In this document: one piece after another, positions 7,984 to 50,200 of the stretch
Numbering within the stretch: the stretch's first letter is position 1
How the letters are laid out: the number at the start of each line of letters is the position of its first letter
Origin: Adineta vaga
Taxonomy: Eukaryota > Animalia > Rotifera
NCBI GenBank assembly: GCA_021613535.1
Contig: CP075497.1
Span: 7,378,001 to 7,442,000, forward strand
DNA length: 64,000 nucleotides
Reading direction: 5' to 3'
Notes under the pieces: model-generated
The model's input: the letters and a program-made list of their open reading frames with translations, nothing else
Told to the model about the DNA's origin: nothing
The model's database searches: none
Program-made: the position numbers and the translations under genes

Positions 7984-8573
7984 AGAAATGTTCTATTGTT
8001 TTTTATAATTAGTTAATGGAATCTTTGTTTTATTTTTAAAACCTGTGATAATATCAATAAAAGATTACAACGGAAGTTTATGTGATTGTAAAAATAAATA
8101 TTCGAGCTAAATGCTTTGATTAAAACTAGATCTTTTCGCATTTTTAATACAAACAACTACAACTTGATATATCATTTCTGAGACATTTATGAAACGAAAA
8201 AGATCATATTTATTTATTATACTAACACATTAATGAGTATTGATTCTAAGCTGTAATTTGATCGTCTATATCAAATATCTCCAATCACGTATCGTTTTCA
8301 TAAGAACCAAGTACTCAATGACATTGAAACATGTTTTTCTTTCTCATATATGCAACTGAACACACGTGTATCATGAAAAATAAGTCATAGTATTCTATAA
8401 AGTCATTATAATATATTCTTGAAAGTTTTTCTGATCAGAAAAAATATAAGACTGATAAAAAAAAGAGACACTCTATCTTAAGTAGTGAGAACACTCATAC
8501 ATACAAATATATAGGTACATTCAATACACAACAAATGAAAAAGAAAGAAAGAAAATGATCAGTTAACAAATCA

Positions 8574-9416: not shown

Positions 9417-10403
9417 TGAACAGTAAATTTAAAATTTGCACTGATACAAACAGCATGTTCATGTCGAACGAACGAAAGATACGAATGATCATGAATAAAA
9501 CTGAAAGAAATAGAATTTCGAATGCACACGTGTTTTTACGAAGGATTGAACTAAGAAATACAATTAAGAAACAAAAATGCACATGTTATTATTAAGGAAG
9601 AACGTTTCTACTATAAACTTTATCCCTCGATTTTATGACCAGTATAAATCACAACTTTAACCTTGAAATATAGTTGAATATTCAAATGTAAATATCAAAT
9701 CAGAAAGCATCTGTATGTTTATGAAAGGATACTATTTCATATCACTGTTTTCGTGATGATACTTATTCTAATATCAGTAATGGAAAAACTAAATTCTATG
9801 TAAGAAAAGATTTACATTTGTAATTTGATGCTTTATTTTTTAATGACAATATGTCCGTTTTCTTAAAATGCACTTTATCATTTATTAAGACGGTGCGACG
9901 TTAGGAGCATCGTATTATTGAGTTTCTTTGCGTCTTTTTATTCTTTTTACTATTTCTAACGCGATGATCTAGAAAACTGAATGTTGCTCAACTGTCACAC
10001 AAACGTTATCGAGAAGTTCGGGTATTGAATATGATATATCTTTCGTTCGATTTTCTATACGTATTCGGTTTGTCAAAAATAAAACACAAGTGCTAAGTGC
10101 CTGACAATTAGCTGAAAAAAGAATTAATCGACACAGCGACATCGTTTATTTCATTGAAGTTCATAAGTATTCGCAGAGATTCTCAACTTTGTCGCATGTA
10201 TTTCGCAATCGAGCTATGCTCGAATGCCTCTCTAGTTGAAAGAAAATAGTCATGCATCGACCATTCGATCGCTTATTTTTTAGTATATTTTTATTTTGTA
10301 TTTCGTTCGTTTTTTATTGATTGTAAAGTGCTATTTAACGAGCCACAGTTACCGAATAATATATATATATATATATATAGGTACTCGTCATTGGTGTTTC
10401 AAC

Positions 10404-11567: not shown

Positions 11568-11910
11568 GATGTTTTTTGTTTCTCTTTAGATTTTTATCTT
11601 ATTTAAGCAAATAAAAATAAATCAGAAGGAAATTAACAGTCGTTCTTCAACGAAATGGTTTTAAACATGAATTTATTATCAAATTCAAACTTAAAAAAGA
11701 ACATCCAAACTTAATAAAAAAAAACCTTTTTTCTCTCATACTAATTTTTTTTTCTTAACTTTAACACATAACATAAACGAGTAATATTCGAACTCTACAA
11801 ATATAATAAATAGGTAAAGAATCATAAAAAAAAACAACACAACAACAATAATAATGAAAAGAAAAATTAATAAATTTTTCTTTTCTTGTTTTGTTTTGTT
11901 CTCAAATCGT

Positions 11911-42510: not shown

Positions 42511-45355
42511 ATGTTCAAAATAAGATGTGACGGAGTAGTTCCGATGATGGATGCTTTATCTACCGATAATGACTCAGCATCAATGGATTCTGTTGTACCG
42601 GACGAAGATTCATCCAATGACGAATACGTTGAAGTAGTTACAAAACGTAGTAAGAGCTTTATATTTTTTTTCTTCTACTCAACAATAAATGCATTTTATC
42701 ACTAGATGCTGTGAATAAAAGTGAGAAACAGGTTAAAACTAACAAACGTACAAAAAAACGTAATAATACGAAATACAAAAAGGAGAGAAATGAGCCAATG
42801 TACACAATCATAAAGCAGGTATTTATTCGTATTGTTTTAATATACGTATAATAATAAATCTATGGAATAGACTTCATATTTTCCTCCTGAATCTATGTGT
42901 AAATTAACGGGGTGGCATCTATATAAAATCAAAGTAGCAAATTATGATTATTTTGGCTTTATTGTACCTTGCATACTAGGAAAGGTAAATTTTTGTTTGA
43001 TAAATTTATTCTTACAATGAAGAATTTATTCTAGATACCACCGTTCACCTTTCCTCGAAACAATGTAGAATCAATTGTAAAAGTGGAATATGTAGAACCA
43101 ATTAATTACAATAAATACAAAGATCAGTTTGAAAAATTTTGTCGATATATTTTCGAAGAAGATTTCACTGATATGAATACAGGACCAGAAGCAATTCTCA
43201 AGTTTGATATTGAATCTTCACCTTTCAAATTACTACCATGTCTATTAACAAGTAAGACTCTTGACTTACTTATCTATTATAAAATCAATTATTTTTAGAT
43301 TTGGGCAGTATAGATTATCGACAAATGCATTTGATATGTAGTAAAACAAATAGATTGGACCAGAATTTGCAGGAAATAGATGATGATGATGATGATGTTG
43401 ATGTTCAATCAAGTTCATCAGTGGTACAGTTCCATGCGTGTCTACCTCAAATTATCTCATCAAAGAGAAAAGCTGTTCAAAGGATGTCTTCAAAACGATC
43501 GAATACGGGTACATGCGAATATTTTGATAAAACAACTATAATGACAGCCACGAAAGAAGATGATATCTGTTATTCACATGAGAAATCCACGATAAAAGAT
43601 GAACAATCAACTCTTCAATCATCTCATGCTCCGCTTCCTGTTTCGGATCGTGATATATCCAATCACAAAAAATCGCAATTCGCTCCTGAATTACCAAAAA
43701 TTCTTGATCTTATTTCTCAAGTGTTTTATAAAAATAAATTAAGAGAACTATTAATTGATGCTACTGGCTCACATTCGGTAATATTTACAAATGCAGACAC
43801 ATACATGAACATGTACAATTCTTATGTATTTTTCTTTTGTAGACAAATGATCTTGACGGCATGTCACCTGTCACTTTTACTAATTCTCTTCCAACTATAC
43901 TTTCATCGGTAAGATTCTCAGAAACTGTATACTGTATACACTATAGCTTTATTTTTCTGTATATACAGCCAAATGTATTGCCCCTAACCAGTCTTTCTCA
44001 TGATTTGGTATCGGAGAATAACTGCGGGTTACATCCAAAATTTGATCTACTTTTTCAAGCGACTACTTGTCATTTAGCTGATGAAAATAGTAATATGGAG
44101 AATTTAGAAACGCTTGGAGATTCTTTTCTTAAAACAACAAGTCTATCTGTTTCTTACCAGTGTCCCGTGGGTGAGGATAAGAAACTGACAGTCGAAAGAG
44201 ATAAACATGTCGCAATGAGAATCTCTGTCGGTTGGCTCGCGAAAAAGGTTTACACAATTACTTAAACGCTCATAAATCAATCTATAGTGGAAAACAAGCG
44301 AATTGGCTACCACCTGGTTATAAAGTTCATGATGAGAAAAATGCAGAAAAGTATATGAAAGGAAAAGTGAAAGAAAAAGTTATTGCTGATATGGTTGAAG
44401 CATTGATTGGTTGCTACTTAGTATCTAGTGATTATATAACAACTTTGAAACTTATGCAATGGTTAGGTCTAAATGTAATTCCATTGGATGAACAAAGTAA
44501 AATGCAATATTAATCATGTCAGAAGTAAAAATATTTAATTTAGGAAATGTGATAACAACATTTCCACTTCTCCGTTCAGACATTAAGATCAAAAAATCAA
44601 TTGAAGAAATGTTCTATGAAAAGTCATTCACAGAAATCGAGGAAAGACTCATCGCTCATAAGTTCAAAGAAAGAGCATATCTCATTGCTGCTTTCACTCA
44701 TCCATCATATAACAATACGGCGTCAACCATAAGTTATAACAAGTAAATGAATGTATTGTTCAAATAGTATCTTCATCTATTGTTCGTAGATTGAAATTCG
44801 TGGGTAATCCATTGTTCGAGTTCTTGTTAACTCGTTATATTTTTGTCGAAAAGAAATTAACAACTCCACGTAAGAATGTTTTGTCAGTCTTGTATTTAAT
44901 CAAACATATTTTTTATAGATGAGGTAACACGCATTCGAAACAAACTAGCAAATTCGGATCACAAAGCCAGTATTATGAAAGACCATAGGCTGTATACTAA
45001 ACTTCTTTTTTGTGAAGCAGAACATGCTAAAACAGTGTCTGATTCTGACTCTGAGCAGTCATCGATGGATCATAATGTATGTTGGTTATAGCTTCTGAGA
45101 AAAGATATCATTTTTTCTTTTACAGAATATCGCAAAACCGTCACTTCAGGAGACAAAAGAAGTTCAAGCGTCTATTTTTGATGCACTTATAGGTGCTATA
45201 TTTTTCGATACAAATTGCTCACTAAATATTGTTTGGGATGCTATATGTTTCTTGATGCAATCACATATTGGTGTGTAAATGTAACTCTTAATGTTAAAAA
45301 TATATATTTTTCTTTATATTTGTTAGATGATGCTATTAATAATCTGAATTTATAG
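42511..45355 (+). pseudogene. Dicer-like A: no helicase, degenerate PAZ, RNase IIIa motifs intact, RNase IIIb inactive, no dsRBD, one frameshift at about 44212
   Basis: Platform exons are homologous to Dicer B (FKLLPCLLT). IIIa has ENLETLGDSFLK and IADMVEALIG. IIIb has KLKFVGNPLFEF and QASIFDALIG. Intron positions are shared with B. It may be functional if the frameshift is an assembly error. Confidence 0.75.
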
Positions 45356-45451
45356 TCAATACATTCATCTAATTACCTATCACCAACATCTCAATTTAAA
45401 GAAAAAATAAACACTCTGGTATTGCAACTTATTCCATAAAACCAACGCAGT

Positions 45452-45554
45452 ATTGGATATTACAATAATGTGTATATCTTCGGTATAAACTGTTCAATAC
45501 GGATTGAACCGTTGATATCAAAGATATATAGATATTATTGTAATATCAGGCAAT
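45452..45554 (+). ncRNA. Pre-miRNA-like hairpin (about 40-bp stem, 4-nt loop)
   Basis: gatattacaataat/attattgtaatatc (14 bp perfect), tgtatatctt/aagatatata, gttcaat/attgaac around loop acgg (45499-45502). The structure is seen; expression is unknown. Confidence 0.45.
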
Positions 45555-46083
45555 TTCTATATAAGAGTTTAAATGCAAACCGATTTTTATGCATGTCTGT
45601 AGAGTACTGTCCCTTCTATCGTTATCTCGTGGTTCAGTATCGTGCGTAGTTGAGAAACGAAATGAGATCAAATTTCAGTAACTCGATAGTAATACTCTAC
45701 CTTTTAGTTAGGAGAGTTGTAGATTTTTCATTCACAGGTTCCAATAACGAGTGGTTTTCCATGAGGATTTTGTTCTAGAAGAATCAATGCTATTTGGATA
45801 GGTCTATTCCGAATCGCTCTCAATCAGTTTTTTTTTCAACAGAATGGACATTGAAGAACGACTTCAGTGTCCTACTTCATACTCTTTTGAGAAAACTTGA
45901 GTGAGAATGACTTGAAATTAGCCTAACGAAAAGTCGTTGGTCTTTTCAACATTAAGTTCTCTTGGCAAGTAACTCGCGATTAATACTTTTGAAGGAAAAA
46001 TCCCCCTGTTTATGGAATGATATTTTTTATGCATTCAAAAGAAAATATGTATTCCATTACCTTCCAATAATCATATAGCGTAG

Positions 46084-46587
46084 GTAAGCAGTCTTTGACG
46101 ATTAATCTTTGCAGGCATTCGAACTTTCATCATGGTACAAGCTCCAGTAGACATGAACATCTCCAGAATGACAAGTATCTATCGATGTTCCTTGCAAAGT
46201 GATAATCATTTTACTGAACATCATCGAATCCGCGTCACAATAGATTTTTCAAAGAGTTTTATGATGAAATTTCAACTTGGTATTACAGTCACAGAGATAT
46301 GTATTTGACAGTTGAATACGCTCTAAAGTTTGACTACTTTTCAGGATTCATAGCAATATAGAGATATCTCCGTGAGTTTAATGATACCAAGTTGAAATTT
46401 CATTATAAAACTGCTCGAAATCGATTGTAACGCGAACCCGATAATATTCAGCAAAATGATTATCACTTTGCAAGGAACATCGATAGATACTTGTCATTCT
46501 GGAGATGTTCATGTCTCACTGGAGCTTGTTTTATGAAGAGAGTTCGAGACAGGCAATGATTCATCATCTGAGACTGTTTTCTTGTAG
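46084..46587 (+). repeat. Long fold-back inverted repeat (about 240-nt arms) bounded by GTAAG and TTTTCTTGTAG
   Basis: 46149-46212 is the exact reverse complement of 46453-46516 (64 bp). Imperfect pairing extends out to 46084/46581 and in to about 46330. Confidence 0.92.
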
Positions 46588-47231
46588 AAGAGAAAGAGAG
46601 GACCTTTCATTTTTGTCAGTAATAGTCAGCCATGTATAACTATCGAGTTAATGAACTATGATTCTTATTTCTTTTTGAAAACACGCATGATTCAACACGA
46701 TGAGGTCGCGATCAGCAGTTTTTTGTTGTTTTCTATTGTTTTCGATTTATGTTTGTCAATGAATCTTTTTTTTTGTAATAAAAAATATTCAATCGTCGAA
46801 AAAACCAGTATTGGTTCACGTAAAATTCTCATTTTGTTAAAATGATAATATAAAATTCAATATTTACATGAGAACGATGTGTTTATGAGCAATTGTATCA
46901 TTTCTGATTGTTCGTTCTTGTTAAACATTATGCAGTTTGACTACTATGAAACGAAAAAAACCCAGTAACCACGTGTGGATTTCGAGATGTTTTCTTTTCT
47001 GATTCAAATAAGAAAGAGAATCAAATGCAGCCACCAAAAACATCAACAGAACGCAAAATTTCCATTCTTTTTTTAAGTATTTTGGTGAGTTAACATTAGT
47101 CGAGCATTTTCATGTAGTAATCATATTGCTGTAGGTTTAACAACCATACATTCGTTAATGGTTACAACTACAACTTCGCAAGTTATATAGATTAATTTTT
47201 TTCTGAATAAATTTCGCATTCTGGTAGCACG

Positions 47232-50200
47232 ATGACTGATAGAAATAGAGTCGATCTTGATCCTCGGTCATATCAAGTAGATACATTCTTTTTTCACTTC
47301 AAATATATCATAGATTTAATTTACATAGACGGAAATAGTGGAACAAGCAAAATCAAAGAATTTGATTGTTTGTCTTCCAACTGGCAGTGGAAAAACGTAT
47401 ATTGCTGTTATGCTTATTAAAGAACTATTGCCCATGACTCGACAATCTCTCGCTGATGGAGGAAAACGAACTATTATTCTCGTGAAAACAGGTATTTAAT
47501 TTTCTTGAATCGGATCATAAAACTTCTTAATTTTATTTTTATTCAAGTCGAACTTGGTCGACAGCATTATAATACAATAGATAGCCATCTTAAATTAGAA
47601 ATTATAGCTTATGCTGATTCCCCGCAAATTCGATTACAAGATAGAGAAAAATGGATGAAAATATTTGAAAAGTATAAAATCTTGATTTTTACCGCACAAA
47701 CATATGTTAATCTACTTCAACATGGTCTTTGTTGTAAGATAAAGGCAATGGATTTTTCAGCAAATTGTAATTGTTTCTTTTTCAGCATTAAATCAAGTGA
47801 ATTTATTAATTTTTGACGAATGTCATCATGCAAGTGGTAATGATCCTTATACGACAGTAATGAAACAGTATGATGCACGTTCCGATTCGCCTCGTATACT
47901 CGGATTAACTGCATCGATTAGTGGACAAAAGCTTAAACCGAAAGATCTACAAAAAGCTGCTGGTGAATTAGAAAAAATGTATCAGTAAGTTTCAGTATAA
48001 TATTGAAAGTGATTTGTATAACAGCAATGATTTCTAGTGCACAAATTGAGACTGGATCTGATCGAGATGTAATCATTCAAAATAGTACATCAGTAAAAGT
48101 GCAACATGATCGTTGTGATAACTATAAACAATACATCACTGTCAAGAAAAGAACGGAAGTTATGAATATCTTTAAAGTTAGTTTTCGTTGTTTGTTATAC
48201 GATGATAGTTTGAGCTTGTATTTAATTTAGATAGCCGAATCGCTTCGTGATGAACTCGATAAGTATTTAAAATCCAAAACGCAAGAAGTCGAAATGAAGA
48301 ATGATACATCAAAAATAGCAGATCAATCAGTGTTTATTTCTTTACATTGTCGAACTTTGAAACAATTGAAATCTCATCTAGATAATATTATACATATTGG
48401 TGATGATCTTGGTTTCCAAGGATTTCTTCACGGAATAATAGCATTAAACAAGCATTTGAAAGCAAATCCTTTGTATGGAATAATAAGTGATGAAGTTGGA
48501 AAAAGCGTATACAATAATATCAAAGATAAACTTAATTCTATTATCAATACCAATACAGAAGCTTTTACCAATGATCAAAAAATTAAATATAGTGATAAAG
48601 TTATGAAAGTAAAAGAATACATAATAAACAATCAAGATAGTCAATGTATTGTCTTTGTCGAACGAGTTTATACAGCTGCTTTTTTATGTCAAGTGTTACG
48701 CGAAATTTTCGAAGGAACTAAGAAAATACAATATATTTCTGGTTCAAAAGCTTATATTGATGAAATCAGTGTTTCAAAAGCTTCGAATGCTGGAATCAGT
48801 AATCCGACAACAGATGAAGTCCGTGAATATCACAATTGAAATCATTTTATTTAATTTTAATTTTTAGTGTGACGTAGTTAAAATGTTTAGAAAGAAAACT
48901 TGCAATGTTTTGGTATCTACAGCTATCATTGAAGAAGGTTCGAAACAAAAAATACTTAAATATCGTTTATATGTGAGAAATTTATTTTACTTTCTAGGTT
49001 TGGATGTTCCGGAATGTAATCTTGTTATTCGTTTTAATAAACCTCAAAATTTATCATCTTATTTACAATCCAAAGGACGTGCAAGAAAGCTAGGAGGAAA
49101 CGCATTATTTGTTGTGTTAAGAGATGAAGCTACTCCCGAAAGTTACGCTCTAAATAAAGAAGAATATCTCAATTACGAATGTATAGAAAAGGTTAGTAGA
49201 TTACAATGCTTCTATATTCACTTCCTATTTCCTTATTGTTAACACTACAGTTATTAAAAAACAATTTTAAAAGTGAACACGATTTCGATCCATCATCGAA
49301 TGGCGACGATAATTTACTGAAACCATATCAAACACAGAAAGTGAAAATTGATGCAATACGTGCCATTGAAATCATATATCAGTATGTACATAATTCGATG
49401 ATTGTCTATTATTTTTATTCTATTTCTTTTAAGATATTGTGCTGTTCTTGGTACTAGTACATTTTTGTCACCTCAATTTTACTTTTCTTCAATTGAACAT
49501 AAAAATTTTCAATGTATTCTAACAATGCCTATCAATTGTCCAATTACTGAACCTGTTATTGTAAATTTTCGATTTCTCTCGGAAACTTCTCATTTTTGTT
49601 TTTTCATAGTGTGCAAACAAAACAAAGAAATTAGCGAAACAAGAATGCTGTTTGACAATGGTGAAAATGCTTTGCGAGAAAAGTAATGATTTTGAATAGT
49701 ATGTATTTAAAAGATTTCAGATACTTTTCATAGACGAACTCGATGAATATTGTTTACCAATTATTTTGAAGCGACGTTTAAAAACAGATCATACTTTCGG
49801 TGATGATCCAGGTAGATCAACACTTGAATCAATAGACATACAAGTATCTATTCATGTTTCGAAATACAACAAAGATTATGAATTAATTCGTTCTATTAAT
49901 TAGATTTCGTATTTATTCCATACATACAATCATGCGTCAACGGATTGGTATTTATATAGAATTAATATTTCAGACAATGATGATCTTGGTTTTGTTATTC
50001 CTGTTCAATTAAAATCTACAGTAATGATATATTTTATCCACGTGATTATTTTATAAACTTATCTTTAGTTACCACACTTTACACTCTATGGTCGTGATAA
50101 GGAATTTATCGTGGAAATTCATTGTGTGAAAGTGATTGATATTCAAGAATGTACAGATCAATTGGAGACCTTTTGTCAATATATTTTCGAAGAAGTGTTC

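What the first reader, a model, noticed from the sequence alone, without database searches (positions are those of the whole stretch)
46084..46587. 504-nt fold-back whose ends are a splice donor and acceptor: giant mirtron-like hairpin intron or introner upstream of Dicer B
Seen: AG|GTAAGC at 46084 and TTTTCTTGTAG| at 46587. The whole interval folds, with a 64-bp perfect core and a small apical loop near 46330, and G46084 pairs with C46581 to leave a 6-nt 3' tail. Most arm mismatches are transitions, split between strands, but the outermost wobble pairs favour +. GTAG occurs just before the donor and as the last four bases, like a target-site duplication supplying the acceptor. Known: mirtrons are hairpins released by splicing, and introners are inverted-repeat elements carrying splice sites. 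Inference: splicing would release a ~240-bp dsRNA Dicer substrate 645 nt upstream of the Dicer B ATG, possibly from its 5'UTR. I saw no match to the arms elsewhere in this window.
Basis: partly seen in the sequence, partly recalled or inferred. Interest (0 to 1): 0.82.

Follow-up and report, generated by a model that had tools for sequence, protein, structure and literature searches.

The report
Fold-back nested in Dicer-linked hairpin
A real, single-copy 504-base fold-back in a bdelloid rotifer genome sits inside an older hairpin that at least six rotifer lineages keep directly behind one Dicer-like gene, so it is more likely a built-in source of double-stranded RNA than a spliced intron or a jumping element, but no RNA data could be reached to prove it.

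Summary
Window 46084-46587 folds into one long hairpin (z = -27.6) with a 64-bp perfect core, GTAAGC and TTGTAG at its ends, and no other copy in the 100.8-Mb genome, which is probably Adineta vaga.

- The element is not an introner or MITE family.
- It is unlikely to be a Dicer B 5'UTR intron. A conserved poly(A) signal, a conserved promoter-like block and 17 upstream ATGs lie between it and Dicer B.

The main new result is comparative. Five other bdelloid lineages (metagenome contigs and one NCBI assembly) keep a hairpin cluster in the same place, immediately after the stop codon of the upstream Dicer-like gene: one or two stem-loops of about 40 bp plus a 316-422-nt hairpin.
- The arms of the long hairpin co-evolve and are better conserved than the neighbouring coding exon.
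- The window retains the outer arms of that hairpin (45628-45694 and 46598-46703).
- The 504-nt element lies between them and has no homologue.
- A second lineage independently carries a different nested fold-back of about 440 nt, and two lineages carry MITE-like inserts there.

My best reading is a lineage-specific, self-folding module of a conserved Dicer-linked dsRNA locus. Its transcription, strand and processing are inferred, not shown.

The parts
45135..45355 (+). End of the upstream Dicer-like gene (Dicer A): last RNase IIIb exon, a 56-nt intron (45271-45326), and a short terminal exon with the stop codon at 45353-45355. If the intron is not spliced, the stop is at 45276-45278.
   Evidence: Frame translations, the sequence itself, and homology of the exon to L007, L015, L053, L135 and L174. 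The orthologues continue into dsRBD-type exons that the window lacks.
45456..45547 (.). Small conserved palindrome: a stem of about 40 bp with a 4-nt loop. It is the first member of the hairpin cluster.
   Evidence: Self-complementary at 81% over 92-94 nt and single-copy in the genome. It is homologous to one or two such palindromes in every orthologous spacer. The ends and centre are conserved and the middle varies but stays paired.
45628..45694 (.). Left outer arm of the ancestral long hairpin. It contains the conserved block GAAACGAAATGAGATCAA.
   Evidence: nhmmer with a profile of the orthologous arms gives E = 8e-12. blastn matches both arms of the L007 hairpin and L015; alignment A1.
45696..46083 (.). 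Extra interior sequence that forms an irregular long hairpin ('hairpin X', about 45716-46010) and a small stem-loop. It includes a partial direct copy of the arm motif at 45968-45987.
   Evidence: Folding gives z = -5.3 on the + strand and -3.0 on the - strand. The direct repeat is D2. It is single-copy in the genome and has no significant match to the arm profile.
46084..46587 (.). The finding: a 504-nt fold-back. The DNA inverted repeat spans 46086-46579 and the apex lies near 46330. It is lineage-specific and single-copy.
   Evidence: for the structure and copy number. It has no homology to the interiors or arms of L007, L015, L053, L135 or L174.
46149..46212 (.). Left half of the 64-bp perfect core. 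Its partner is 46453-46516.
   Evidence: Longest perfect complementary run. The flanking arm segments carry about 19% mismatches.
46598..46703 (.). Right outer arm of the ancestral long hairpin. It starts 11 nt after the end of the 504-nt element.
   Evidence: nhmmer on the minus strand gives E = 1.9e-6 over profile positions 3-106. It is only 56% complementary to the left arm over 112 nt, with 78% over about 57 nt.
46777..46782 (+). AATAAA poly(A) signal 74 nt after the right outer arm, preceded by a T-run.
   Evidence: A + strand AATAAA or ATTAAA lies 74-106 nt after the right arm in the window, L007, L015, L053 and L174. This stretch is 84-86% identical within the L007 group.
46954..47095 (+). 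Conserved promoter-like block upstream of Dicer B, with CACGTG at 46970-46975 and an ACAGAACGCAAAATTT motif.
   Evidence: blastn to L007:6060-6193 (71%, E = 4e-13), L015, L017, L053 and L174. The short ORF starting at 47025 is not conserved in L007.
47218..47276 (+). Acceptor-like site (ending at 47226) just before the Dicer B ATG (47232), and exon 1 of Dicer B. The first intron, 47277-47327, is 51 nt.
   Evidence: The sequence. The helicase motif exon was confirmed by Pfam. A YAG lies 4-7 nt before the ATG in L007 and L015 as well.

Best explanation
The 504-nt fold-back is a lineage-specific, self-folding module inside an old, conserved compound hairpin locus. That locus begins within about 20-100 nt of the stop codon of the upstream Dicer-like gene (Dicer A) and ends about 75-105 nt before a conserved poly(A) signal.

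Shown:
- The hairpin cluster (short stem-loops of about 40 bp plus a long hairpin) is orthologous in at least six bdelloid lineages.
- Its arms co-evolve and are more conserved than the adjacent coding sequence.
- In this genome the outer arms of the long hairpin are retained, and the 504-nt element occupies what should be its inner stem and apex.
- Other lineages carry unrelated but also self-folding sequence at the same place.

Inferred:
- The cluster is transcribed on the sense strand as the 3' untranslated or downstream part of the Dicer A transcript.
- It folds into long double-stranded RNA and is cut by RNase III enzymes.
- That cutting gives small RNAs and/or destabilises the Dicer A message, which would be a feedback loop.
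- Because the hairpin has to keep folding, only insertions that fold on themselves are tolerated at its apex. This would explain why every lineage-specific interior is palindromic.

On this reading the 504-nt element adds about 240 bp of near-perfect duplex to that substrate. Its splice-like ends are most likely incidental.
For: - Reality and uniqueness of the fold-back. One search is a positive control for the copy search.
- Orthology of the locus: the L007 Dicer exon hits the window's Dicer B best (57%, next paralogues 37-38%), and the tandem Dicer-Dicer layout is the same.
- Hairpin cluster in L007/L008, L015, L053/L061, L135 and L174.
- The window's arms are homologous to the arm profile (E = 8e-12 and 1.9e-6), and the 504-nt element is not.
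- Consensus structure: 145 pairs, 18 with double compensatory changes among 4 distinct taxa.
- Arm co-evolution: within-taxon arm complementarity is 77-88% against about 69% between taxa.
- Conservation: arms are 70-82% identical across the three deep lineages, where the adjacent exon is 44-56% identical in protein. Within the L007 group the arms are 72-86% identical against 36-56% for the rest of the spacer.
- Position: the first hairpin starts 18-100 nt after the stop codon, and the poly(A) signal lies 74-106 nt after the last arm in all five taxa examined. L007 and L053 have no signal in between.
- Independent nested fold-back in L174, not homologous to the window's.
- Self-folding MITE-like inserts in L053 and L174.
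- Published precedent for conserved hairpin bases with more than 1 kb of lineage-specific, highly paired interior: PMC12553114.
Against: - No RNA evidence of any kind could be obtained. Records of the window's own species are withheld from the contig look-ups.
- Mismatches in the stems show no wobble bias to either strand: 45 G:T against 36 A:C in the outer arms and 29 against 34 in the other hairpins. Complementarity could therefore be kept by a DNA-level process.
- In this genome the ancestral outer stem has largely decayed (56% complementarity).
- Dicer A here has lost its dsRBD exons, and an extra AATAAA lies at 45406, before the hairpins. The locus may be degenerating here, and the 504-nt element may be a passenger.
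- No target or parent gene was found for any hairpin.
- Rfam has no matching family.
Confidence: 0.45

Rival explanations
1. Neutral passenger. The 504-nt element is a relic of a fold-back transposon or MITE insertion, or a local inverted duplication made during break repair. It landed in the apex of the old hairpin and has no function of its own. The host locus may itself be decaying in this lineage.
For: - The interiors of the same hairpin in L053 and L174 contain MITE-like material with the rare termini AGGGGAAA...TTTCCCCCT, related to an element on chromosome 1.
- A 4-bp GTAG direct repeat flanks the element.
- Long fold-backs occur about once per 100-250 kb in this genome, and one sampled example is a low-copy repeat.
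- The window's outer stem is decayed and Dicer A is truncated.
Against: - There is not one other copy or fragment in 100.8 Mb, although the same search finds 73% identical copies of another fold-back.
- The termini next to the GTAG repeat match poorly (3 of 5 bases) and lack the MITE family's ends.
- A 64-bp perfect core between arms with about 19% mismatch is not neutral uniform decay.
- Arm complementarity of 79% equals that of the conserved, evidently maintained hairpins of the other lineages.
Confidence: 0.25
2. DNA-level element. The palindromes act as DNA, for example as cruciform-forming or protein-binding sequences that insulate or terminate between the tandem Dicer genes. They are kept self-complementary by arm-to-arm gene conversion, with no role for a hairpin RNA.
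For: - There is no wobble (G:U) excess on either strand in any hairpin, and transversion mismatches are as common as transitions.
- The small palindromes in four of the six lineages are centred on the palindromic E-box CACGTG, which also occurs in the Dicer B promoter-like block; in L015, L174, one L135 copy and the window the centre is CAATACG.
- Folding energies favour neither strand consistently.
Against: - Gene conversion explains complementarity but not 70-82% sequence identity across deep lineages over more than 100 nt per arm.
- Arm identity of only 77-88% is low for conversion-homogenised palindromes.
- The cluster sits between a stop codon and a conserved poly(A) signal, which suggests a transcript.
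- The window's small palindrome lacks the CACGTG centre.
Confidence: 0.15
3. The element is a spliced, mirtron-like hairpin intron, either of a Dicer B 5'UTR or of the Dicer A 3'UTR. After debranching, the released lariat gives a Dicer substrate of about 240 bp.
For: - AG|GTAAGC sits exactly at the base and a pyrimidine-rich TTGTAG lies 8 nt past the last pair.
- AGGTAAG occurs only twice on the + strand of the 64-kb window, and GTAAG occurs 0.78 times per kb, so a strong donor at the base is not expected by chance (about 1%).
- A Dicer B orthologue in L009 has a genuine 677-nt intron that is almost entirely one hairpin.
Against: - No flanking exon is known.
- The 5'UTR version must read through a conserved poly(A) signal and a promoter-like block, and leaves 17 upstream ATGs.
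- Local introns are 51-56 nt long.
- The independent nested fold-back in L174 and the ancestral hairpins have no such motif pair.
- The motifs were picked after seeing the hairpin.
Confidence: 0.08

Closest known systems
Giant microRNA hairpins of invertebrates (Javad-zada et al. 2025, PMC12553114)
   Same: A conserved, sequence-constrained pair of arms at the base of a hairpin. Between them lie up to more than 1 kb of lineage-specific but highly base-paired sequence (the 'Dicer-excised region'). Elongation has happened repeatedly and independently in different lineages.
   Different: - No small RNA is known from these arms, and Rfam matches nothing.
- The conserved part is over 100 nt per arm, not a single 22-nt duplex.
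- The basal stem is far longer than the roughly 35 bp of a primary miRNA.
- Annotated A. vaga miRNA hairpins average 63 nt (PMC12256650).
- The UGAGAUCA in the arm equals the bantam seed (from memory). It would lie on the 5' arm whichever strand is read, whereas mature bantam comes from the 3' arm.
Hairpin RNA (hpRNA) loci that give endogenous siRNAs in Drosophila (for example PMC10317233; PMC12553114 discusses hp-mir-997-1)
   Same: A single-copy long inverted repeat of several hundred bases that forms a near-perfect duplex, evolves quickly and would be a substrate for a siRNA-type Dicer.
   Different: - Drosophila hpRNAs derive from, and target, identifiable genes. No parent or target was found here.
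- Drosophila hpRNAs are young and species-restricted. Here the host hairpin is conserved across deep bdelloid lineages and is fixed next to a Dicer gene.
- Expression was not tested.
RNase III genes that carry their own substrate hairpin: DGCR8 mRNA hairpins cut by Drosha, the E. coli rnc leader, the MIR838 hairpin in an intron of plant DCL1
   Same: A stable hairpin lies within or directly behind the transcript of a gene of the dsRNA-cutting machinery, which suggests self-limiting feedback.
   Different: - Those cases have experimental proof of cleavage. Here both the transcript and the cleavage are inferred.
- The position (after the stop codon), the size (300-1100 nt) and the multi-hairpin layout differ.
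Mirtrons
   Same: The hairpin has a consensus-like 5' splice site at its first base and an acceptor-like motif near its last, leaving a short 3' tail, as in tailed mirtrons.
   Different: - Mirtrons are whole short introns (about 60-100 nt) of known host genes and are defined by spliced reads and small RNAs.
- This element is 504 nt, has no known flanking exons and lies in an intergenic spacer.
Introners and MITEs (10.1101/2022.06.06.494994; PMC12130899)
   Same: Inverted-repeat structure and a short direct repeat (GTAG) at both ends, one copy of which could supply a splice site.
   Different: - Introners and MITEs are families with many copies. This element is unique in the genome.
- Its termini are poorly matched.
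- A real MITE-like family (termini AGGGGAAA...TTTCCCCCT) was found in the homologous hairpin interiors of L053 and L174, and it is unrelated to this element.

Membership tests
Introner / MITE family | Many dispersed, similar copies in the same genome | tested here: not met
   The whole element, its left arm and its 58-aa ORF hit only themselves in the 100.8-Mb genome. The same tool found 73-74% identical copies of another fold-back.
Introner / MITE family | Well-matched terminal inverted repeats directly flanked by a target-site duplication | tested here: inconclusive
   GTAG is present on both sides. The 5-7 bases between it and the paired region match only 3 of 5, and a 4-bp match at flexible offsets is expected by chance in a few per cent of cases.
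Introner / MITE family | Sits inside a transcribed gene and is removed as an intron | not testable with these tools
   No transcript data were reachable. The position is intergenic, between the Dicer A stop codon and the Dicer B promoter-like block.
Mirtron | The hairpin is the whole of a short intron of a host gene, shown by spliced reads | not testable with these tools
   No RNA data. No flanking exons are recognisable. The length, 504 nt, compares with 51-56 nt for local introns.
Mirtron | Splice donor and acceptor at the two ends of the paired stem | tested here: met
   GTAAGC at 46084 and TTGTAG ending at 46587. In the centroid fold G46084 pairs with C46581. The motifs alone do not show use.
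Mirtron | Dicer-sized small RNAs from the stem | not testable with these tools
   Public A. vaga small-RNA runs exist (SRR3185495 and SRR3187155, named in PMC12256650) but cannot be mapped here.
hpRNA (endo-siRNA hairpin) locus | Single-copy long inverted repeat forming a duplex of several hundred bp | tested here: met
hpRNA (endo-siRNA hairpin) locus | Arms homologous to a target or parent gene | tested here: not met
   No DNA or translated match in the genome. No complementarity to neighbouring genes beyond shuffled controls. No match in viral contigs.
hpRNA (endo-siRNA hairpin) locus | Transcribed and processed into 21-22-nt siRNAs by a siRNA-type Dicer | not testable with these tools
   No RNA data available.
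Giant miRNA hairpin | Conserved arm sequences at the hairpin base across species, with a lineage-specific, highly paired interior | tested here: met
   Arm profile hits in the window and in L174. The interiors are not homologous. All interiors are strongly structured.
Giant miRNA hairpin | The conserved part is one miRNA/star duplex of a recognised family, with a basal stem of about 11 bp below the cut | tested here: not met
   Conservation spans more than 100 nt per arm. No Rfam miRNA family reaches its threshold.
RNase III self-substrate (autoregulatory hairpin) | The hairpin lies within the transcript of an RNase III pathway gene | tested here: inconclusive
   The cluster starts 18-100 nt after the Dicer A stop codon. 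The conserved poly(A) signal follows the last arm in the five taxa examined. Transcript ends were not observed, and the window has an earlier AATAAA at 45406.
RNase III self-substrate (autoregulatory hairpin) | Cleavage of the hairpin by the enzyme lowers its own mRNA | not testable with these tools
   Needs experiments.

The most novel reading that the evidence does not exclude
The conserved outer stem behind the Dicer-like gene may be a standing 'platform'. Its apex repeatedly takes up new sequence in self-complementary form: unrelated fold-backs in this genome and in L174, and MITE-like inserts in L053 and L174. Each lineage would then express a different long dsRNA from the same Dicer-linked transcript. 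That would make the locus a heritable, updatable dsRNA cassette, for instance a record of past invaders or a tunable self-substrate that sets Dicer activity, and not a fixed regulatory hairpin.
Probability: 0.1. Interest if true: 0.85.

Novelty: new variant of a known kind. Interest (0 to 1): 0.6.

Why it matters
Bdelloid rotifers have unusually large RNA-silencing gene sets, and their endogenous dsRNA sources are barely described. I found no paper that mentions hairpins at their Dicer genes.

A hairpin cluster held in the same place behind a Dicer paralogue across deep bdelloid lineages would be interesting for three reasons.
- Its arms are more conserved than the adjacent coding exon.
- Its interior is replaced by different self-folding sequence in each lineage.
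- If it is transcribed, it would be a new example of an RNase III gene carrying its own substrate, and a natural case of how long hairpins grow.

The question is directly testable with public A. vaga small-RNA and RNA-seq data. If the locus turns out to be silent, the result is still useful. It would then be a conserved DNA palindrome system between tandem genes whose apex attracts or tolerates fold-back insertions.

Tried and rejected
**Organism**
- My first guess, from six chromosomes, about 100 Mb, low GC and several Dicers, was Trichoplax. I dropped it.
- Earlier notes name Adineta vaga. The six contigs and the (TGTGGG)n arrays near chromosome ends fit the AV20 assembly described in PMC8494291.

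**Transcript evidence**
- Exact look-ups of ORFs in and beside the hairpin found nothing.
- The species' own protein P0016 (99% identical) has no retrievable contig, because records of this genome are withheld.
- Spliced gene models were never joined.

**Other searches that led nowhere**
- A metagenome scan with a 25-mer from the perfect core gave 0 hits.
- Rfam gave only far-sub-threshold matches to plant long-hairpin MIR families, which is structural resemblance only.
- The arm motif with one mismatch or fewer hits 10 other genome sites. None extends beyond about 20 nt. One lies in a GPCR-like ORF, and I judged it a chance match.
- The hairpin cluster shows nothing above shuffled controls against neighbouring genes, including all three Dicers.
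- The 58-aa ORF in the left arm has no relative in viral contigs.

**Ideas tested and dropped**
- Strand from folding energy or wobble counts: differences lie within the scatter of random segments, and pooled counts are balanced.
- A conserved acceptor-like TATAG at the left base of the long hairpin, which could have been a trans-splice site: it is not conserved in L174.
- The short ORF at 47025 followed by a GTGAGT donor, as a possible upstream exon of Dicer B: the ORF is not conserved in L007.
- Bantam identity of the UGAGAUCA motif: rejected, because the motif would lie on the wrong arm.

**Limits and housekeeping**
- Among the 120 chance loci fetched by the motif scan, two are labelled human-gut metagenome (L037, L043). 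They were only part of a bulk BLAST screen, gave no hit and were not used. I took no contig for human.
Full report
**1. The observation**

Window 46084-46587 is a genuine fold-back.
- As RNA it folds into a single long hairpin of -269.2 kcal/mol. Dinucleotide shuffles average -109.9 +/- 5.8, which gives z = -27.6.
- As DNA the inverted repeat runs 46086-46579 at 79% identity.
- It contains a 64-bp perfect core, 46149-46212 against 46453-46516.
- The centroid fold pairs G46084 with C46581.

- Transitions are only about half of the mismatches.
- The minus strand folds a little better (-283.9 kcal/mol). That difference is within the scatter seen for random segments.

The perfect core is non-random. 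The rest of the arms carry about 19% mismatches. The transition mismatches also sort oddly by position: the outer arms have 6 G:T against 1 A:C, and the inner arms have 1 against 11 (Fisher p = 0.0017). I cannot explain that pattern.

**2. Genome and copy number**

The window is chromosome 6, positions 7,378,001-7,442,000, of a 100.8-Mb, six-contig genome.
- Earlier notes of this scan call it Adineta vaga.
- The six chromosomes and the abundant (TGTGGG)n arrays towards chromosome ends fit the AV20 assembly described in PMC8494291.
- I treat the identification as likely, not proven.

The element, its left arm and the 58-aa ORF in that arm match nothing else in the genome. As a positive control, a comparable 419-nt fold-back found in a random 200-kb sample (L155:2989-3407) did return 73-74% identical copies elsewhere. 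The element is therefore not a member of a MITE or introner family. That sample also gives a base rate: long fold-backs occur roughly once per 100-250 kb, so they are rare but not unique to this locus.

**3. Gene context**

The element lies in a spacer of about 1.9 kb between two tandem Dicer-like genes on the + strand.
- Dicer A's last RNase IIIb exon ends at 45270. After a 56-nt intron, a short terminal exon stops at 45353-45355.
- Dicer B starts at ATG 47232. Its first intron is 51 nt, and its exons carry helicase, PAZ and RNase III domains.
- Between the element and the Dicer B ATG there are 17 ATGs and an AATAAA at 46777.
- There is also a block at 46954-47095 that is conserved in other species and contains CACGTG.
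- An acceptor-like YAG lies 4-7 nt before the ATG in the window, L007 and L015.

This layout places the Dicer B promoter and 5' end downstream of the hairpin, which argues against the 5'UTR-intron reading.

**4. Comparative evidence**

*Where the loci came from*
- A Dicer B exon retrieved 45-59% identical fragments on environmental contigs. Their loci (L007/L008, L015-L018) show the same Dicer-to-Dicer arrangement.
- A scan of metagenome contigs with a conserved 18-mer from the arm added L053/L061 and L135 among many chance hits.
- An exhaustive protein search with a Dicer A exon led to L174, a contig of NCBI assembly GCA_905332035.1. Its accession lies in the series of the bdelloid assemblies of PMC7943196.
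- The L007 exon hits the window's Dicer B best (57%), with the next paralogues at 37-38%, so these loci are orthologous.

*What every spacer contains, in order*
1. The Dicer A stop codon.
2. Within 18-100 nt, one or two palindromes of about 85-90 nt. Each has a stem of about 40 bp and a 4-nt loop. Their ends and centre are conserved, and the middle varies but stays paired.
3. A long hairpin of 316-422 nt.
4. A T-run and a + strand AATAAA or ATTAAA, 74-106 nt after the right arm.
5. The CACGTG block.
6. Dicer B.

*How well it is conserved*
- The long hairpins align with 145 consensus pairs, 18 of which show double compensatory changes among four distinct taxa.
- Within a taxon the two arms are 77-88% complementary. 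Arms from different taxa are about 69% complementary.
- Across the three deep lineages (window, L174, L007 group) the arm is 70-82% identical in nucleotides, while the adjacent Dicer A exon is only 44-56% identical in protein.
- Within the L007 group the arms (72-86%) and the 100 nt after them (84-86%) are as conserved as coding sequence (68-81%), and much more so than the rest of the spacer (36-56%).

**5. Where the 504-nt element fits**

- A profile of the orthologous arms finds the window's left arm at 45628-45694 (E = 8e-12) and its right arm at 46598-46703 (E = 1.9e-6). It finds nothing in 46084-46587.
- The element therefore lies between the retained outer arms of the ancestral hairpin, and its right end is 11 nt from the last homologous base.
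- To its left are a further 388 nt, 45696-46083, also single-copy. They form an irregular hairpin (z = -5.3).
- The small palindrome is present at 45456-45547 and is single-copy.
- L174 has the same nested design. Its outer arms (profile E = 1e-22 and 2e-19) are separated by 1,075 nt that hold a fold-back of about 440 nt and another small palindrome.
- The two interiors are not homologous: the best local score is 26, against a shuffle maximum of 30.
- In L053/L061 the apex carries a palindromic insert of about 95 nt with the rare termini AGGGGAAA...TTTCCCCCT. The same termini bound a 300-nt element next to telomere repeats on chromosome 1 of the window's genome. A diverged copy of that element's body lies in L174's interior.

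The apex of this conserved hairpin has therefore acquired different sequence in at least three lineages, and in each case the new sequence folds on itself.

**6. Interpretation**

*Best reading (0.45).* The cluster is an RNA structure in the 3' part of the Dicer A transcript, and the 504-nt element is its lineage-specific inner module.
- The cluster starts almost at the stop codon, which leaves no room for a separate promoter.
- It ends just before a conserved poly(A) signal.
- It is conserved in sequence and in pairing.
- It accepts only self-folding additions.

Such an RNA would be a long dsRNA substrate for RNase III enzymes. It would yield small RNAs and/or limit Dicer A expression. Every step beyond the sequence anatomy is inference.

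*Main weaknesses*
- No RNA data were reachable.
- There is no wobble signature for either strand.
- No target was found.
- The locus shows signs of decay in this genome. The outer stem is down to 56% complementarity, the dsRBD exons of Dicer A are lost, and an earlier AATAAA lies at 45406.

*Rivals*
- A neutral fold-back insertion or repair-generated inverted duplication (0.25).
- A DNA-level palindrome function (0.15).

The strong donor motif exactly at the base is unexpected by chance, at about 1%. But it was chosen after the fact, it has no counterpart in L174's independent nested fold-back or in the ancestral hairpins, and local introns are ten times shorter. A genuine hairpin-filled intron of 677 nt does exist in the Dicer B orthologue on L009, where L007 has an intron of about 120 nt. 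Long fold-backs inside bdelloid introns are therefore real, but that is a different site and a different sequence.

**7. Comparison with known systems**

- The compound architecture is closest to the giant miRNA hairpins described in PMC12553114. It fails the test of a single recognised miRNA duplex.
- As a single-copy long duplex it works like a Drosophila hpRNA (PMC10317233). It lacks the defining parent or target gene.
- As a hairpin attached to an RNase III-pathway gene it recalls DGCR8, the rnc leader and DCL1-MIR838 (from my own knowledge).
- It is not an introner or MITE.
- Mirtron membership cannot be tested here.

I found no report of hairpins at bdelloid Dicer genes. PMC7943196 discusses only copy numbers, and PMC12256650 lists 129 A. 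vaga miRNAs with hairpins of about 63 nt.

**8. Verdict**

- The wider finding is a conserved, compound hairpin cluster behind a Dicer paralogue whose interior turns over. It is a new variant of known kinds and can be tested immediately with public small-RNA and RNA-seq data.

Noticed in passing
L009:5790-6466: In a Dicer B orthologue on an ENA contig, the intron before the RNase IIIa exon is about 677 nt and is almost entirely one hairpin (-253 kcal/mol, 149-nt arms at 86%). The same intron in L007 is about 120 nt. L009 also has palindromes at 1244-1340 and 1553-1763 (inside a 2-kb gap between helicase exons), 8444-8562 and 9918-9962.
   Followed up: partly
L176:1512-1817 (genome chromosome 1, about 334,100-334,420); L053:2247-2340; L174:3377-3572: A MITE-like family with the rare termini AGGGGAAA...TTTCCCCCT and an interior of short GATTCT-type units. 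One copy lies next to telomere-type repeats in the window's genome. Related inserts lie inside the conserved hairpin of two other bdelloid lineages.
   Followed up: partly
window 46954-47095: A promoter-like block upstream of Dicer B, conserved across bdelloid lineages (CACGTG at 46970-46975, then ACAGAACGCAAAATTT). The same CACGTG palindrome forms the centre of the small hairpins in the L007, L053 and one L135 copy.
   Followed up: partly
window 47218-47231: An acceptor-like YAG lies 4-7 nt before the Dicer B ATG in the window, L007 and L015. It could be a spliced-leader trans-splice site or the end of a 5'UTR intron.
   Followed up: no
window 45271-45355: Dicer A of this genome ends after a short terminal exon (nine codons, then the stop). 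It lacks the two C-terminal dsRBD-type exons present in L007 and L015.
   Followed up: partly
window 46087-46310 and 46384-46579: Transition mismatches in the 504-nt element are strand-coordinated by position. The outer arms are almost all G:T and the inner arms almost all A:C on the + strand (Fisher p = 0.0017). No such bias appears when all hairpins are pooled.
   Followed up: partly
window 45650-45658; L007:5406-5414: The most conserved arm block contains UGAGAUCAA, the seed of the bantam miRNA family (from memory). It would lie on the 5' arm on either strand, so this is probably a coincidence.
   Followed up: partly
window 11839-11899: Another small palindrome (64 nt, 84% self-complementary) far from the Dicer cluster.
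   Followed up: no
L155:2989-3407 (genome chromosome 1, 6,002,989-6,003,407): A 419-nt fold-back (80%) with two 73-74% identical partial copies near chromosome ends (chromosome 1 at about 26 kb and chromosome 6 at about 13.24 Mb). It is a low-copy fold-back repeat and served here as a control.
   Followed up: partly
L175 (NCBI GCA_965120305.2, contig CBCPMS020000765.1): A full-length Dicer gene (helicase, Dicer dimerisation domain, two RNase III domains) from another assembly has no inverted repeat in the 6 kb after its stop codon. The hairpin cluster is therefore specific to this Dicer locus, not to Dicer genes in general.
   Followed up: partly
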